DNA from: Blepharisma stoltei ATCC 30299
Taxonomy: Eukaryota > Protista > Ciliophora
Assembly (NCBI GenBank): GCA_965603825.1
Contig: CBFDEM010000056.1
Span: 62,001-126,000, forward strand
Direction: 5' to 3'
Length of the DNA stretch: 64,000 nucleotides
The notes below the pieces were generated by a model, which saw nothing but the letters and a program-made list of their open reading frames with translations, was not told the DNA's origin and did not search any database. The translations under genes were made by a program, and so were the position numbers. Of this stretch, positions 1-5,986 are shown one piece after another (position 1 is the stretch's first letter; the number at the start of each line of letters is the position of its first letter).

Positions 1-920
1 TTTAACTTTTCCCGAGAATTTGGAGAATAGTGCAAATCTTTTGTTTTTGGAGATTTCCACTGGCTTGTTACTATAATATCAGCTAATTCTACCTTTTTAG
101 GTCCAGAATACGAGTCTTCAGAAATCTTGTCAAAGCTAGCTTTGGAGTTTCTTTTTGGAGAAAACGAGCTTAGTCTTTTCTTAAAAACTCGCTTGTTTCC
201 ATTATCAAAATCCTCATTGCTAATAAATGATGATTTTTTACTAATTGGGCTAAGAAAATCCGTATTGACAGCAAATGAAGATTTCTTATTATTTGGGCTA
301 AGAAAATCCTTATTAGCGATAAATGATGATTTTCTACTATTTAATCTGGGAAAATACCTTGTTTGCTTTTTAGAATGGGGAGATGGGGTTGAGTCTAAAT
401 TTATTATCTTTTTTGTCTGAGGTTTAGATTTAGTCATATCTACAATATCAGTAATTACAATTTTCCTTGGCCTGTTTAAAGTCCCATCAAAAGTATTTTC
501 AATTGATTTTTTACTGCTTACAGGAGAGAGACTAGACTTTTTCTTCTTTGTCTTTCTTTGAGATTTTTCAATAATTATTTTTTCTATATCTATATTTGAC
601 AGCTTTTCTATCATTTTCTCCGCGGAGTCATTTTGATTTAAAAATTTCAAAGATTTTAAATAATTGTAATTGTTTTCTCTTTCCTTCATTCTGCATCTCA
701 CCCTATTCAAAATTTCTCCTAAATTGCCTTCTATTGGAGCTAGTTTTACATGTTTTGGGGAAATTTTCTCCTTAGTTCCTCCATATAATTCTATATATGG
801 AAACTTTAATTCTTGCTTTGGCTGCTCTTTATGCGCAATTTCTTTTGCTGAGAGTATATTTTTTATCAAGCTATTGATATCAATTTCGTTTCCACTAAGG
901 CTTTTGATGCTATTTTCCAT
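1..920 (-). CDS. Hypothetical Lys/Ser-rich protein, 3' part runs off the window
   Basis: ATG at 920 (MENSIKSLSGNEIDINSLIKNILSAKE...) after an AT-rich leader; the frame appears open toward the window edge. The + strand ORFs 127..420 and 670..957 are its antisense shadows. Confidence 0.7.
   Translation of the reverse strand, partial: MENSIKSLSGNEIDINSLIKNILSAKEIAHKEQPKQELKFPYIELYGGTKEKISPKHVKLAPIEGNLGEILNRVRCRMKERENNYNYLKSLKFLNQNDSAEKMIEKLSNIDIEKIIIEKSQRKTKKKKSSLSPVSSKKSIENTFDGTLNRPRKIVITDIVDMTKSKPQTKKIINLDSTPSPHSKKQTRYFPRLNSRKSSFIANKDFLSPNNKKSSFAVNTDFLSPISKKSSFISNEDFDNGNKRVFKKRLSSFSPKRNSKASFDKISEDSYSGPKKVELADIIVTSQWKSPKTKDLHYSPNSREKL
205..346. repeat. About 3 imperfect 48-nt (16-codon) coding tandem repeats
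   Basis: gggctaagaaaatcc recurs at 247 and 295; aaatgatgatttt-like units occur three times. Confidence 0.75.
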
Positions 921-1067
921 TAAAAATAATTATTCTCTCAAATTTTGTTGGTATTGATATATAATAACACTATAAATATTTTAAGAAAAATATTTTCCCA
1001 TCTACAAAGAACCAAAAATTTTGATAATTACAATAAATTAATTATATTAAGACATAGATTTCTTATA

Positions 1068-2879
1068 TTAATAAGGATATGCTCTATGGACCATCTTCAG
1101 CTTCGTCTCACATAACGAGCATTTTCCATGTGGATGATTTGTAGGGATCTTCTTATCTAGCGACAGTCCTAGTTCATTTAGACACACATTGCAGTACATT
1201 AAATGTCCACAAGGGACGAAAACAGTGTTTTTCTTTTCATTCATACAAATAACACAAAGTTCTCGGTCTTGATATTCCCTGACAATAATTTCTCTTTCTT
1301 GCACCCTTTGCATTTCAATATATTTTTTCATATCTGGCGCTTTATTTTCTTCGAAATTTTTCTTTTGTACATAAAGCTGCTCGTTTAGCCTCTCAATGGT
1401 ATCAGCCATCTGCTTTTCTATTGCATTTTTTTCTTCAAGCTGCCTTTGTAAGAATATTATTTTTGTGCCTCTTTCGTCGATTTCTTTTCGTGACTTATCA
1501 GATTGCTCCAAAATTGTTTCTTTTTGCTTTTTAGTCTGAGTTTTTAAGTTTTGTAAATCTGCTTCAAAGTTCATGCGGTTGGCTTCTTTTTCTCGTCTTT
1601 CCCTGTCGATTTCTTCTGCTAGTTTTTGCAGCTCTTTATCATAGCCAGTTTTTAAATTTCTTATTAAAGCTTCTGTTTTAGTCCTAAGGTCTTGGATTTC
1701 TTGATCTTTATCTAGTAACTTTTGCTGGAATTCGACTTTTACTGTATTTTCAAACTCATAGACTAAGCCGTCACATTTTATTTTAAATTCATTTCTTTCC
1801 TGAGCCAGTTTTTCGCATTCTTCTTGTAAAAGCCGATTTTGATTTTCAAGAAAAGAAATTTTTTCTTCATGCGATTTTAATTTATTTTGGTAAGCTGACA
1901 AAGTGTCATGCTTTCCATATAAAAGTGAATGAGGCACTGCAAAAAGCCCAAGCTCTGAGTCTGTGACGGCTGAGCCAAACCCTGTGTCTTCTGTTCTATG
2001 AGCTATTAAATAAATTAAATTCTGCTCAGATGACGATTGGGTAGAAACTGCAAGCTTGCATGGTGGCTTCCCATCTACATGCCCAGTAAGCATCTGTATA
2101 AAAGACCTGTAAATCGTTTTTGATGAATTTTCACTATCATTTGGGTACAATGTGGCGACTAAATATTCCCCATGATTCCTCTGCTGCTCAATTTCACGCA
2201 ACCCTGGCCATTCTCTATGGTCTGCAGATGCAGTCCTATCTATCCACAAATCCATTTCATTAAAGCACTGATTAGGGTTTGCGTTAGTTTTCCATACCGA
2301 AAATTGCTTAAATATAAAATGGACTACAATTAAGTGACGGGAGTTATCAAAAGGCTCTATTTTCCTTATTTTGGTGCATGGAGGTGGGATAAACTGCTCT
2401 TCTGTGCTTACTAAGCCATGGGCATAATTTAGTTTCCCACTAAGTGTCTGGTCAAGAGCTGGGACTGGTGGTGCTTCATATCGAGAATCTCTATTAGGAC
2501 AGAACTGTAAGTGTCGATCCCAGGCGATTTTTTCGTCATCTCGAATTTGGTGGTTTGGATTATAAGGACATACACGATAAGTTCACAATGCTGAAGTTTG
2601 CTGGCCATTAGCAGCCAGTTTGTAAGAACTTCTTGAGTAATGTGAAGTGCATCTTGGCTCATGGTACTTTAGCTTGGCATCGTCAATAAAAATATGACTT
2701 ATGTTGTGTTTGCAGACTTTTATTCTAGGCTTGATGTAGTTGAAATCTTTGTTTTTGCATCTTGTGATGTGGTATTTAAAAGATTCAGGGGTTTGCAGAC
2801 GATGATTAGGCTCGAAAGGGCAGGTTGTATGATCATAATTGTCAATTTCGTATTCGTTTAAATCTTGAGGCGTTGACAT
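1068..2879 (-). CDS. 603-aa protein: three CHHC (U11-48K/GTSF1-type) zinc fingers, coiled coil and C-terminal RING-HC
   Basis: ORFs 2583..2879 and 1068..2255 are in frame and joined by one TGA(Trp). I translated 2256-2582 and found no TAA/TAG. Fingers: CPFEPNH..HITRC, CKHNISH..HEPRC, CPYNPNH..HLQFC. RING: CVIC..PCGH..CNVC..CSLC. Confidence 0.85.
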
Positions 2880-3016
2880 ATTTTTATAGTCAGGGGGGAT
2901 ATCTTCTTTAAATAAATTTTACTTAATTTCAGCATTTCTCTCAAGAATGGGTAGATTATAGGTAAATTAAGAGAGATTTATTTAAAAATCAGCAGAATAA
3001 GAAAATTTATAGAAAA

Positions 3017-4363
3017 ATGAGCACCGTAAAATGCTTTAACCCGAGGTGTAAGCGTAAAGCAAAATTTTGATGCAATTGTACATCTCCAGAGACTTATTAC
3101 TGCGAAGAGCACCACTTAATGCATTTAAAATCAAACAACAAGCCTCACACTTCCAGTTCGCTATTTTTTCAAGCTATTGATGGTAAAAAAGAAGAAATTC
3201 TCCAGCTTCTTGAACAAGAAAAATCTAAATTTGATGCAATAAAAGTAGAAATCATAGCTTCCTTTAACCAAATACTTTGTGATATTGAAAAGGCCCTTAA
3301 AGAAATTTTGAAAGAAATAGACTCAGACGTCGAAAAAATTAACAATTATTTCGAAAAGGTGAACAAAGTGAGGGAAGTATCGATATTTGATGATGATCCA
3401 GTTATGAAATTATTGGTTTCTGAGACTGATGGTGCTGCTGAAAAAATTAAAGAGAATTTTAAGGCAATCTCATATAACGATATTGAGAATTTCTATAATA
3501 TGAGCAATGAAATTAGTAAAATTATAAAGAGATCTAGCCAAAATCCTTTGAGGCAGCCATTATTTCCTATTTCTTCTTCCTCTGGCCAATTTATTCCACA
3601 CTTTCCAACCATTCTCGAAGCGGAATCTTTAAATTTAGAAATACCAAATATTTCCCCTCCAATAATGATGCACGACCAATTTCCATTGAGAGAACTAAAA
3701 CATGTCCCATGTACACGTTTCCTTGCATCTAAACTTAATCGAAGAAATATTCAAGGAGAAATTAAAAGAAAATACAATCTTATATCTGTCAAATATAATG
3801 GGGAGGTGTTTATCCTAGAAGGAGGTCCTGAATCTGTTCAGCAAGCAGCTTTAGAACTATCAAATATTATCGCCCAAGAAAAAGATGTCGATATACATTG
3901 GAAATGGCTTTGCGAAGATGGCCAATTTGAAGATTACAGCCCTGCAATAAGTGAATTAATTGAAAATGCTTATAGCAGACATGATCAAAGTGCATCCATT
4001 TATATTAAGGGCATGCGATATAAAGTAATTTTCGGAAACCCACACGTACAAGTCCTTTCAAATTCAAATATTTCACGAACTGTTAAAAGAATCGATGAGA
4101 ATCAGGCTAAAAATGGTATGTGCCAAGAAAACGCTAATAATAACGATAAACCTTATGTCAGTTGATATTGGCTAGATGATGATTCGAATTACAAAGAATT
4201 TTCACATGAAGCTTCAAGACAAATTGAGGCAGCGTATAGCCAAAAGAGCATAGCTTTGGTTCAAGGCAAAGATAATAGAGCATTTTTGGTTGACGCAACA
4301 AAAATGATGCAAATTAATGAAATGACTCGACATACAAGGAGGGTCAGAAGGGGAGATAGCTAA
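3017..4363 (+). CDS. 448-aa protein: Cys/His zinc-binding N-terminus, coiled coil, KH-like segment and two WWE domains (copy 1)
   Basis: ATG 3017, TGA(Trp) at 3068 and 4163, TAA 4361. WWE-like motifs HWKWLCEDGQFEDY..IENAY and SWYWLDDDSNYKEF..IEAAY...RRVRR. Confidence 0.8.
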
Positions 4364-4625
4364 TAATTTAAGTTAGTGTGATCGATTTATATTTTAGGTT
4401 TAATATGATTGATTAGATTTCTTATAATTTGGTAATGAAATGCAAGGCTTTTATTATATGTGAATGCAATGAAAAAAAAACCTACTGATTAGCAATAGCC
4501 CTATTTAATATTTATACTTAATTTCAGCATTTCTCTAAAGAATATGCAGATTATAATATTTAGATTATAAGTGCATAAAAAGAGATTTAATTAAAAATCA
4601 GCCGAATAAGGAAAATTATAGAAAA

Positions 4626-5986
4626 ATGAGCACCATAAAATGCTTTAACCCGAGGTGTAAGCGTGAAGCCAAAATTTCATGCAATTGTACATCTCCAGAG
4701 ACTTATTGTTGCAAAAAACACTTCTTTGGGCATTGTGAATCAAACAACAAGCCTCACACTTCCAGTTCGCTATTTTTGAAAGCTGTTGATGGTAAAAAAG
4801 AAGAAATTCTCCAGCTTCTTGCACAAGAAAAATCTAGAATTGATGCAATAAAAGCAGGAATTATAGCTTCCTTTAACCAAACACTTTGTGGCTATGAAAT
4901 GGCCTTTGAAGAAATTTTGAAAGTAATAAACTCAAACGTCGAAAAAATTAGCAATTATTTCGAAAAGGTGAAAAAAGTGAGGAAGGTATCGATATTTGAT
5001 AATGATCCAGTTATGAAATTATTGGCTATTGAGGATGATGGAGCTGCTGAAAAAATTAAAGAGAATTTTAAGGCAATCTCAGATAAAGATGCTGAGATTT
5101 TCTATTCAATGAGCAATGAAATTAGTAAAATTATAAAGAGACCTAGCCAAGATCCTTTAAAACAGCCATTATTCCCTGTTTCATCTCCCTCTGGCAAATT
5201 TATTCCACACTTTCCAAACATTCCTGAAGCGGAGTCTTCATACTCTACTTTAAATTTAGCAAAACCAATTATTCCCCTTCCAATAATGATGCACGACCAA
5301 TTTTCATTGAGAGAACTAAAAAATGTCCCATGTCCACCTATCTTTGCATCTAAACTTAGTCGAAGAAATATTCTAGCAGATATTAAAAACAATTACAATC
5401 TTATATCTGTCAATTATGATGGGAAAGCGTTTATCCTAAAAGGAAGTCCTGAATCAGTTCAACAAGCAGCTTTAGAACTATCAAAAATTATCGCCCAAGA
5501 AAAAGAAGAGGTCAATGTACATTGGGAATGGCTTCGTGACGATGGCTGTTTTGAACCTTACTGCTCTCCAACAAGTGAAATAATTGAAAATGCTTATAGC
5601 TACATGATCAGAGTGCATCCATTTATATTAAGGGCATGCGATATAAAGTAATTTTCGGAAACCCACACGTGCAAGTCCTTTCAAATTCAAATATTTCACG
5701 AACTGTTATAAGAATCGATGAGAATCAGGCTAAAAATGGTATGTGCCAAGAAAACGCTAATAATAGCGATAAACCTTATGTCAGTTGATATTGGCAAGAT
5801 GATGATTCGAATTACAAAGAATTTTCACATGAAGCTTCAAGACAAATTGAGGCAGCGTATAGCCAAAAGAGCATAGCTTTGGTTCAAGGCAAAGATAATA
5901 GAGCATTTTTGGTTGACACAACAAAAATGATGAAAATTAATGAGAGGACTCGATATACAAGGAGGGTCAGAAGGGGAGATAGCTAA
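4626..5986 (+). pseudogene. Tandem paralog of the WWE gene with a 1-nt frameshift near 5601 (copy 2)
   Basis: Collinear with 3017..4363. agc-aga-cat in copy 1 is agc-ta-cat in copy 2, giving a premature TAA at 5649. The downstream WWE2 sequence is still intact in the other frame. Confidence 0.7.

What the first reader, a model, noticed from the sequence alone, without database searches (positions are those of the whole stretch)
1068..2879. GTSF1-type triple CHHC zinc finger fused to a RING E3 ligase: candidate Piwi/small-RNA-directed ubiquitin ligase
Seen: reading TGA 2583 as Trp joins two listed ORFs into one 603-aa protein and exposes a third finger hidden from the ORF track. The fingers are C20-x5-H-x10-H-x3-C41, C56-x5-H-x10-H-x3-C77 and C104-x5-H-x12-H-x3-C127. 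They are followed by an uncharacterised domain of about 200 aa, a long coiled coil and a C-terminal RING-HC. Known: CHHC fingers (U11-48K, TRM13, GTSF1/Asterix) bind RNA; GTSF1 proteins usually have two fingers, no catalytic domain, and act with Piwi. Paramecium Gtsf1 has been linked to turnover of Piwi-scnRNA complexes during genome rearrangement. Inference: this fusion could put RNA/Piwi recognition and ubiquitin ligation in one polypeptide. I do not know of a described CHHC x3 + RING protein.
Basis: partly seen in the sequence, partly recalled or inferred. Interest (0 to 1): 0.8.

Follow-up and report, generated by a model that had tools for sequence, protein, structure and literature searches.

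The report
GTSF1-like fingers fused to RING ligase
A ciliate (Blepharisma stoltei) gene joins the zinc-finger module of the Piwi cofactor GTSF1 to a SPOC-like barrel, a long coiled coil and a ubiquitin-ligase RING domain. This makes it a testable candidate for the unknown ligase that destroys Piwi-small-RNA complexes, although that role is not yet shown.

Summary
Minus strand 1068-2879 is one intron-less Blepharisma stoltei gene (UGA = Trp). Its translation is identical to a 603-aa database protein. Single RNA-type contigs span 1060-2893, across the TGA.

- **Fingers:** three CHHC fingers (residues 20-41, 56-77, 104-127) are the only such motifs in the window. An N-terminal profile matches mouse GTSF1 in register (E 6.7e-13) and U11-48K only weakly.
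- **Middle domain:** the 'uncharacterised' domain folds confidently (pLDDT 93) as a SPOC/Ku-type beta-barrel (Z about 10 to the FPA, PHF3 and SPOCD1 SPOC domains).
- **C-terminal half:** a helix of about 200 residues precedes an IAP-type C-terminal RING.
- **Conservation:** twelve aligned proteins share the architecture. The only named ones are heterotrich (Stentor SteCoe_21040).
- **Paralogues in B. stoltei:** a stand-alone 159-aa three-finger GTSF1-like protein (45% identical, same post-finger motif), short SPOC-like-RING proteins, and UBA-SPOC-like proteins.

This is a lineage-specific RING E3 family in which one branch carries a GTSF1 module. A Piwi-directed role is plausible and fits the unknown E3 behind Gtsf1-dependent Ptiwi09 ubiquitylation in Paramecium. 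It is untested: I obtained no stage-specific expression or interaction data. The scan had already noted the stand-alone paralogue elsewhere in this genome, but not this fusion.

The parts
1068..2879 (-). Complete coding sequence: 603 codons plus a TAA stop, no introns. It is identical to database protein P0001.
1060..2894 (-). Extent of the transcript as seen in RNA-type contigs. The 5' UTR is about 15 nt and the 3' UTR about 8 nt. The intergenic flanks are uncovered.
   Evidence: records 1, 6, 9
2757..2822 (-). CHHC zinc finger 1 (residues 20-41, C-x5-H-x10-H-x3-C). All four zinc ligands are invariant in 17 aligned relatives.
2649..2714 (-). CHHC zinc finger 2 (residues 56-77, C-x5-H-x10-H-x3-C). 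Together with finger 1 it aligns in register with the tandem fingers of mouse GTSF1.
2583..2585 (-). In-frame TGA read as Trp99, in the variable linker between fingers 2 and 3.
2499..2570 (-). CHHC zinc finger 3 (residues 104-127, C-x5-H-x12-H-x3-C). Its ligands are invariant across the family, and the finger is also present in the stand-alone paralogue P0012.
2412..2456 (-). Short conserved motif L-D-x-T-x-x-G-x-x-N-x-x-H-G-L (residues 142-156) inside a disordered linker (pLDDT below 50 over 140-142 and 148-178). It is shared with the stand-alone GTSF1-like paralogue. It is a candidate partner-binding peptide (inference).
1905..2342 (-). SPOC/Ku-type beta-barrel domain (residues about 180-325). 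It has no Pfam or PDB sequence match. Conserved motifs are P-G-L, R234 and E-x-x-G-F-G.
1272..1904 (-). Long helical or coiled-coil region (residues 326-536; predicted helices at 326-509 and 517-536).
1071..1256 (-). C-terminal RING-HC (residues 542-590) with a family-specific 20-residue insert between ligands 6 and 7, followed by an aromatic C-terminal tail (A-Y-P-Y). Its closest structural matches are the XIAP, cIAP and IDOL RINGs.

Best explanation
This is one expressed, intron-less Blepharisma stoltei gene. It encodes a 603-aa modular RING E3 ubiquitin ligase of a family seen so far only in heterotrich ciliates.

**Modules, from N to C terminus**
1. A GTSF1-type zinc-finger module (the tandem CHHC pair plus a third CHHC finger), followed by a short conserved peptide in a disordered linker.
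2. A SPOC-like beta-barrel.
3. A coiled coil of about 200 residues.
4. An IAP-type C-terminal RING.

**Proposed mechanism**
- The coiled coil and RING form a dimer that recruits and activates an E2~ubiquitin.
- The GTSF1-like module and its tail peptide dock on a Piwi protein whose small RNA is paired to a target transcript, as GTSF1 does elsewhere.
- The SPOC-like barrel supplies a second protein contact, possibly a phospho-peptide.
- The engaged Piwi, or a protein next to it, is then ubiquitylated and turned over.

**Shown here**
- The gene structure, the transcript and the domain identities.
- Conservation of every zinc ligand.
- Homology of fingers 1-2 to GTSF1.
- The SPOC fold and the IAP-like RING.

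**Inferred**
- Dimerisation, ligase activity, Piwi or RNA recognition, and the substrate.

My confidence is about 0.95 for the architecture, about 0.7 for an active E3 and about 0.3-0.35 for Piwi-directed targeting. The figure given is for the whole statement.
For: **Gene and transcript**
- One frame, identical to P0001.
- Single colinear contigs cross the TGA, with no joints.
- UGA = Trp in this species (PMC9942806) and in the window itself.

**GTSF1 module**
- The N-terminal profile hits mouse GTSF1 6x46 at E 6.7e-13, with profile positions 4-90 on GTSF1 residues 4-90. U11-48K scores 0.004, for one finger only.
- Remote hits of the HMM search include metazoan 'gametocyte-specific factor 1 homolog' entries.
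- The best in-genome paralogue is the 159-aa stand-alone three-finger protein P0012. It is 45% identical over residues 5-160 and has the same post-finger motif.

**SPOC-like fold**
- The AlphaFold2 model has pLDDT 93.3 and pTM 0.85.
- Z is 10.4, 10.3 and 9.6 to the SPOC domains of FPA, PHF3 and SPOCD1. The top 16 hits all belong to this superfold, and the scores then fall to Z below 5.
- Foldseek and the ESM Atlas search agree.

**RING**
- Eight ligands at canonical spacing.
- Pfam zf-C3HC4_3 at 40.8 bits.
- 27-30% identity to the XIAP and cIAP RINGs at probability 1.00.

**Conservation and family context**
- Twelve full-length proteins keep all 12 finger ligands and all 8 RING ligands. One is from Stentor coeruleus.
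- In the same genome the SPOC-like domain also occurs with a RING alone or with UBA-like N-termini. This ties the family to the ubiquitin system.

**Literature**
- Paramecium Gtsf1 binds Ptiwi09 and is needed for its ubiquitylation and for scnRNA degradation. The authors propose recruitment of an unidentified E3 (PMC11724296; PMC11602119).
Against: - I have no direct evidence for Piwi binding, RNA binding, ligase activity or sexual-stage expression. The supplement of the Blepharisma genome paper held here does not mention this gene.
- Contig depths differ between the four runs (about 7-11 against 110-250). They are not normalised and cannot be assigned to stages.
- B. stoltei keeps a separate small GTSF1-like protein that could be the real Piwi cofactor.
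- The fusion, and even the SPOC-like domain, were not detected in named Paramecium, Tetrahymena or spirotrich proteins among 1.84 billion representatives. Only 20 of the 150 listed hits were looked up for names. The Paramecium E3 is therefore not a detectable orthologue.
- CHHC fingers also act outside Piwi pathways (U11-48K, TRM13, and C. elegans GTSF-1 with an RNA-dependent RNA polymerase).
- A tree of the finger modules is poorly resolved. It does not place the fusion with a functionally tested Gtsf1.
- The SPOC fold is a general interaction module (Ku, MED25, INTS14), and no Pfam SPOC match exists.
Confidence: 0.4

Rival explanations
1. An RNA-binding E3 ligase that has nothing to do with Piwi. 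The CHHC fingers would bind a structured RNA or an RNA-protein particle directly (tRNA, snRNA, mRNA or a ribosome-associated RNA). The RING would then ubiquitylate a protein bound to that RNA, for example in RNA quality control or in vegetative regulation.
For: - CHHC fingers are RNA-binding modules in U11-48K, and one finger gives a weak U11-48K hit.
- The transcript is present at substantial depth in several runs whose stage is unknown.
- A separate stand-alone GTSF1-like protein exists that could serve Piwi.
- Other B. stoltei CHHC proteins have unrelated C-termini.
Against: - The module matches GTSF1 as a tandem pair in register far better than it matches U11-48K.
- It shares with the stand-alone GTSF1-like paralogue not only the fingers but also the post-finger peptide. 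This suggests a common protein partner.
Confidence: 0.25
2. A transcription- or chromatin-coupled E3. The SPOC-like barrel would read a phosphorylated peptide such as the RNA polymerase II CTD, the fingers would hold nascent RNA, and the RING would ubiquitylate polymerase, histones or chromatin factors. Piwi could be involved or not.
For: - The closest structural matches are CTD-phosphoserine readers (PHF3, SHARP, RBM15, FPA) and nuclear small-RNA or heterochromatin factors (SPOCD1, Chp1).
- An arginine (R234) is nearly invariant in the barrel.
Against: - No sequence-level SPOC membership.
- The phospho-binding basic patch could not be mapped.
- The same fold serves unrelated interactions in Ku, MED25 and INTS14.
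- Paralogues pair the barrel with UBA-like domains. That points to ubiquitin handling in general.
Confidence: 0.2
3. Annotation artefact: two separate genes, or a gene broken by a genuine stop at 2583-2585. The upstream piece would make only a 98-aa two-finger protein.
For: Under the standard genetic code the ORF list shows two ORFs.
Against: - UGA is Trp in this species and in the window.
- Single contigs cross the codon.
- Finger 3 and everything downstream stay in frame and are conserved in 11 homologues, including one from standard-code Stentor with no stop at that position.
- The contig breaks seen in two runs are at 2312/2317 and 1493/1549, not at the TGA.
Confidence: 0.02
4. A non-catalytic scaffold. 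The RING would serve only for dimerisation or for binding another ligase, so the protein would act as an adaptor or as a competitor of the stand-alone GTSF1-like protein.
For: - An unusual 20-residue insert sits between RING ligands 6 and 7.
- The RING has only moderate confidence in the full-length model (pLDDT 61-79).
Against: - All eight zinc ligands and the C-G-H core are invariant.
- The RING is 27-30% identical to active IAP RINGs.
- The aromatic C-terminal tail typical of active dimeric RINGs is conserved (the functional meaning of this tail is from my own knowledge).
Confidence: 0.08

Closest known systems
GTSF1 / Asterix (mouse GTSF1, PDB 6x46; Drosophila CG3893; Paramecium PtGtsf1)
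   Same: - An N-terminal tandem pair of CHHC fingers with the same spacing, aligned in register (E 6.7e-13).
- A disordered region after the fingers.
- The nearest paralogue in the genome is a small GTSF1-like protein.
   Different: - A third CHHC finger.
- 603 aa instead of about 150-200.
- It carries a folded SPOC-like domain, a coiled coil and a catalytic-type RING. GTSF1 proteins have no enzymatic domain.
- Piwi binding is not shown.
SPOC domains (PHF3, SHARP/SPEN, RBM15, FPA, SPOCD1) and the wider Ku/MED25-ACID/INTS14 barrel superfold
   Same: The fold matches: Z 9.3-10.4 (RBM15 8.7) over 118-134 aligned residues, rmsd 3.1-4.4 A.
   Different: - Only 6-13% identity.
- No Pfam SPOC hit for any of the 21 family members.
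- The conserved motifs (P-G-L, E-x-x-G-F-G) are family-specific.
- The domain context (RING or UBA) is not that of known SPOC proteins.
- Phospho-peptide binding is untested.
IAP-type C-terminal RING E3s (XIAP, cIAP1/2, BIRC7, IDOL, MUL1, MEX-3C); coiled-coil RING dimers such as RNF8
   Same: - A C3HC4 RING at the extreme C-terminus with a C-G-H-x3-C-x2-C core.
- 27-30% identity to the XIAP and cIAP2 RINGs.
- Pfam zf-C3HC4_3.
- An aromatic C-terminal tail and a preceding helix.
   Different: - A 20-residue conserved insert between ligands 6 and 7.
- Entirely different substrate-recognition domains.
E3 ligases that remove Argonaute/Piwi complexes (ZSWIM8 cullin-RING ligase in target-directed microRNA degradation; Drosophila Iruka) and the unidentified E3 of Paramecium Ptiwi09
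   Same: The proposed logic is the same: an Argonaute-family protein in a particular guide or target state is recognised and then ubiquitylated (PMC11724296).
   Different: - No sequence relationship.
- Recognition and ligation would sit in one polypeptide here.
- The function is purely inferred.

Membership tests
GTSF1 family | Two tandem CHHC zinc fingers at the N-terminus with GTSF1 spacing | tested here: met
   - The family profile aligns to mouse GTSF1 residues 4-90 at E 6.7e-13.
- The ligands are invariant in 17 sequences.
GTSF1 family | A small protein (about 150-200 aa) with an unstructured C-terminal tail and no other folded or catalytic domain | tested here: not met
   The protein has 603 aa, with a SPOC-like barrel, a coiled coil and a RING. 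The stand-alone paralogue P0012 (159 aa) does meet this feature.
GTSF1 family | Physical association with a PIWI-clade Argonaute | not testable with these tools
   This needs co-immunoprecipitation or complex modelling with B. stoltei Piwi proteins.
GTSF1 family | Expression restricted to, or induced in, germline or sexual development | tested here: inconclusive
   The transcript is present in four runs of one study at very different contig depths. The stages are unknown, the depths are not comparable, and the paper's supplement is silent on this gene.
Pfam zf-U11-48K (PF05253) | Whole-protein score above the gathering cut-off (21.1 bits) | tested here: met
   25.6 bits, E 1.1e-5, on P0001. 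Each piece searched alone scored only 16 bits. Pfam misses the fingers in the Stentor orthologue.
RING-HC (C3HC4) E3 ligases | Eight zinc ligands with the spacing C-x2-C-x9-39-C-x1-3-H-x2-3-C-x2-C-x4-48-C-x2-C | tested here: met
   - The regular expression matches residues 542-590.
- The ligands are invariant in 12 proteins.
- zf-C3HC4_3 scores 40.8 bits against a cut-off of 27.
- The model matches the XIAP and cIAP RINGs.
RING-HC (C3HC4) E3 ligases | E2 binding and ubiquitin transfer | not testable with these tools
   This needs an in vitro ubiquitylation assay.
SPOC domain (PF07744) / Ku-barrel superfold | The seven-stranded beta-barrel with flanking helices typical of SPOC | tested here: met
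   Model pLDDT is 93.3. Z is 10.4, 10.3 and 9.6 to the FPA, PHF3 and SPOCD1 SPOC domains, and the top 16 hits all belong to this superfold. Foldseek and the ESM Atlas search agree.
SPOC domain (PF07744) / Ku-barrel superfold | A sequence-profile match to Pfam SPOC | tested here: not met
   None of the 21 family members gave a SPOC hit even at E up to 10. The profile also found no PDB sequence.
SPOC domain (PF07744) / Ku-barrel superfold | A conserved basic patch that binds phosphoserine peptides | not tested
   Model coordinates cannot be inspected with these tools. The only pointer is a nearly invariant arginine (R234).

The most novel reading that the evidence does not exclude
The fusion is a 'Rosetta stone'. 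In heterotrich ciliates the GTSF1 module is covalently joined to the E3 that it recruits in trans elsewhere. This protein would then be the ligase that ubiquitylates target-engaged Piwi-scanRNA complexes during genome scanning. That would show that a core function of ciliate Gtsf1 is to deliver a ubiquitin ligase, and the SPOC-like barrel would couple the reaction to a phosphorylated nuclear partner.
Probability: 0.2. Interest if true: 0.85.

Novelty: new variant of a known kind. Interest (0 to 1): 0.62.

Why it matters
GTSF1 is a universal Piwi cofactor with no known enzymatic partner domain. Work in Paramecium in 2024 showed that Gtsf1 is needed for ubiquitylation and removal of Piwi-scanRNA complexes, but the ligase was left unidentified.

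A conserved natural fusion of a GTSF1 module with a RING ligase, and with a SPOC-like barrel, gives a concrete and cloneable candidate. The SPOC fold also occurs in the piRNA factor SPOCD1 and the RNAi factor Chp1. The fusion also gives a mechanistic hypothesis: recognition and ligation in one dimeric protein. This can be tested in Blepharisma or Stentor.

The work also defines a previously unrecognised SPOC-like domain family. In the same genome it is combined with RING or UBA-like domains.

If the Piwi link fails, the protein is still a new substrate-recognition architecture for a RING E3, of interest mainly to specialists.

Tried and rejected
- **Two genes or a broken gene.** Rejected.
- **Tiny heterotrich introns.** I suspected one, for example the GTA...AAG stretch near 2300-2330. 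The contigs show no joints, and that stretch aligns as coding sequence with the homologues.
- **Sequence identification of the middle domain.** It gave nothing:
  - Pfam on the domain and on 21 members.
  - A profile against PDB sequences.
  - The ESM Atlas look-up by features, and by the Atlas's own poor model of this protein.
- **UniProt's automatic 'UBX/UBA domain' names for the stand-alone SPOC-like paralogues.** Pfam did not reproduce them. By eye only the N-termini look UBA-like.
- **Expression stage.**
  - The Blepharisma genome paper and its supplement do not mention the gene, GTSF1, U11-48K or RING.
  - No paper cites the Stentor orthologue.
  - Contig depth is not a measure of expression.
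- **Tree of the finger modules.** The fusion groups with the Stentor-type clade (support 90/86). The position of the stand-alone paralogue, and the direction of fusion or fission, is unresolved, with many long branches.
The own-genome search found no close paralogue there.
- **How the read-through was handled.** By window reference I searched the protein only as its two pieces. Whole-protein steps used the database record P0001, which is identical to the UGA=Trp reading.
Full report
**Where we are.** The window is contig C56:62001-126000 of a 41.5-Mb, 64-contig assembly. An own-genome paralogue is an NCBI Blepharisma stoltei protein, so the organism is B. stoltei. Its published genome has UGA reassigned to Trp, tiny 15-16-nt introns and very short UTRs (PMC9942806). 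In the window, long ORFs bounded by TAA or TAG carry a few in-frame TGA codons. The TGA at 4163-4165 of the neighbouring gene aligns with the first conserved Trp of a WWE domain.

**The observation.**
- The minus-strand frame 1068-2879 has one internal TGA (2583-2585) and ends in TAA.
- Read with UGA as Trp, it is identical to the 603-aa database protein P0001. The Trp is residue 99.
They are the only such motifs in six frames of the window, against 0.2 expected from shuffles.
- The RING is at residues 542-590.
- On the whole protein Pfam gives zf-C3HC4_3 at 40.8 bits and zf-U11-48K at 25.6 bits, both above their cut-offs. On the separate pieces the CHHC hits were below threshold.

**One transcript, no introns.**
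- Four runs of one study hold about 82% of the words of 900-3100, which is the share the gene occupies.
- Laid on the stretch, single contigs of 1803 and 1834 nt cover 1091-2892 and 1060-2893 colinearly, with no joints or indels.
- Coverage is zero at 900-1047 and 2898-2971, and a different contig starts at about 3025-3042 for the divergent neighbour.
- Coverage that stops at gene boundaries marks these as RNA assemblies. The tool itself labels them only as 'RNA?'.
- The contig breaks in the other two runs are not at the TGA.
- Contig depth varies about 20-fold between runs, but it cannot be interpreted.

**The family.**
- A word-seeded search and a full HMMER scan of 1.84 billion representatives were run with residues 1-345 of four members. 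They found only 191 hits at E below 1e-3, and 12 at E below 1e-30.
- Twelve full-length proteins (539-652 aa, 23-36% identical) align end to end. All 12 finger ligands and all 8 RING ligands are invariant.
- Apart from B. stoltei, the one named source is Stentor coeruleus, as hypothetical protein SteCoe_21040. The others come from metagenomes and run assemblies.
- Of the 20 hits whose names I looked up, the only other named ciliate was Stylonychia, a 200-aa stand-alone CHHC protein, not a fusion.
- Variants of 369-496 aa with CHHC fingers, a coiled coil and a RING also exist.

**N-terminal module.**
- A 17-sequence profile of the N-terminus matches mouse GTSF1 (6x46) at E 6.7e-13, with profile positions 4-90 on GTSF1 residues 4-90. 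Both fingers are therefore in register from the N-terminus.
- U11-48K scores 0.004, for one finger only.
- Remote HMM hits include insect and crustacean 'gametocyte-specific factor 1 homolog' entries.
- B. stoltei has a stand-alone 159-aa protein (C23:690875-691342, P0012) with the same three fingers. It is 45% identical over residues 5-160. It also has an in-frame UGA, and it shares the post-finger motif L-D-x-T-x-x-G-x-x-N-x-x-H-G-L.
- In the full-length model the fingers are confident (pLDDT 83-92) and the linker at 148-178 is disordered.
- A tree of the finger modules puts the fusion with the Stentor-type clade (support 90/86). It leaves the stand-alone paralogue unresolved among the heterotrich three-finger sequences, apart from the metazoan GTSF1s.

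**Middle domain.**
- It has no Pfam or PDB sequence match.
- An alignment of 21 sequences gave an AlphaFold2 model with pLDDT 93.3 and pTM 0.85.
- An exhaustive structural comparison puts SPOC domains first: FPA Z 10.4, PHF3 10.3 and SPOCD1 9.6. These are followed by Ku, Chp1, SHARP, RBM15, MED25-ACID and INTS14. Every one of the top 16 belongs to this superfold, and the scores then drop to Z below 5.
- Foldseek against the PDB and the Atlas shape search agree.
- It is therefore a SPOC-like barrel that is too divergent for sequence profiles to recognise.
- In B. stoltei the same domain also occurs in two other settings. One is a set of roughly 294-aa proteins with a short coiled coil and a RING carrying the same insert, at C3, C10, C18 and C32. 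The other is a set of roughly 267-aa proteins with UBA-like N-termini.
- The core of the family is therefore SPOC-like + coiled coil + RING. The protein studied here is the branch that also carries a GTSF1 module.

**C-terminal half.** The full-length model has one helix over 326-509 and another over 517-536. The RING resembles those of XIAP, cIAP1/2, IDOL, MUL1 and MEX-3C (27-30% identity to XIAP/cIAP2, probability 1.00). From my own knowledge, these are dimeric C-terminal RINGs whose aromatic tail helps activate E2~ubiquitin. The family's conserved A-[FY]-[AP]-[YF] end fits that.

**Function.**
- Two 2024 papers show that Paramecium Gtsf1 binds Ptiwi09, is required for its ubiquitylation and for degradation of scanRNAs that match the macronucleus, and probably acts by recruiting an unidentified E3.
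- A GTSF1 module fused to a RING is what such a mechanism would look like in one polypeptide. I adopt that as the leading hypothesis, with moderate confidence.
- The reservations are as follows:
  - There are no expression or interaction data.
  - A separate small GTSF1-like protein exists in the same genome.
  - No orthologue is detectable outside heterotrichs.
  - CHHC fingers and SPOC barrels both have other uses.
- No held paper describes a CHHC + RING or GTSF1 + SPOC protein, or the Stentor gene.

**Verdict.** This is a new variant of a known kind: a RING E3 with a new recognition architecture, or equally a GTSF1 module joined to an enzyme.

Noticed in passing
window 3119-4363 (+) and 4557-5651 (+): Two neighbouring genes, transcribed divergently from the finding, encode WWE-domain proteins. 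The first has two WWE domains (E 7e-11 and 1e-12), joined across an in-frame TGA at 4163-4165. That TGA aligns with the first conserved Trp of the second WWE domain, which is in-window evidence that UGA encodes Trp.
   Followed up: partly
L008:1495-2379 (-) = G000 C3; also L009 (C10), L007 (C18), L010 (C32): B. stoltei has four paralogues of roughly 294-318 aa that consist of a SPOC-like barrel, a short coiled coil and a RING with the same insert, but no CHHC fingers. A fifth, weaker SPOC-like match lies at C41:628876-629319.
   Followed up: partly
P0016 (G000 C13:839599-840102), P0021 (G000 C44:755931-756443), P0017: These are stand-alone proteins of about 253-268 aa. Each has a UBA-like N-terminus, the same SPOC-like barrel and a short coiled coil. 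UniProt auto-names them UBX or UBA domain proteins, but Pfam finds nothing in them.
   Followed up: partly
L002:1501-1980 (+) = G000 C23:690875-691354: This is the stand-alone 159-aa three-finger GTSF1-like protein (CAG9319807.1). It has its own in-frame UGA, between the last His and Cys of finger 3. It is probably the locus the scan noted earlier as a candidate Piwi cofactor.
   Followed up: partly
G000 C13:182879-183082 and C6:237329-237541: Two further CHHC-pair genes with open frames of about 335 aa (E 5e-10 and 6e-9 to the N-terminal profile). One is probably the 'GTSF1-like with PYM/eIF2A-like C-terminus' locus noted earlier by the scan.
   Followed up: no
protein P0039 (1268 aa, source not looked up): This protein combines a reverse-transcriptase domain (RVT_1, E 1e-24) with four CHHC fingers (zf-U11-48K, 116.8 bits). 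It looks like a retroelement-type protein carrying GTSF1-type fingers.
   Followed up: no
proteins P0010 (Stentor SteCoe_21040) and P0004: Pfam does not detect the CHHC fingers in these orthologues, although all their ligands are conserved. Domain-architecture databases therefore under-report this fusion.
   Followed up: yes
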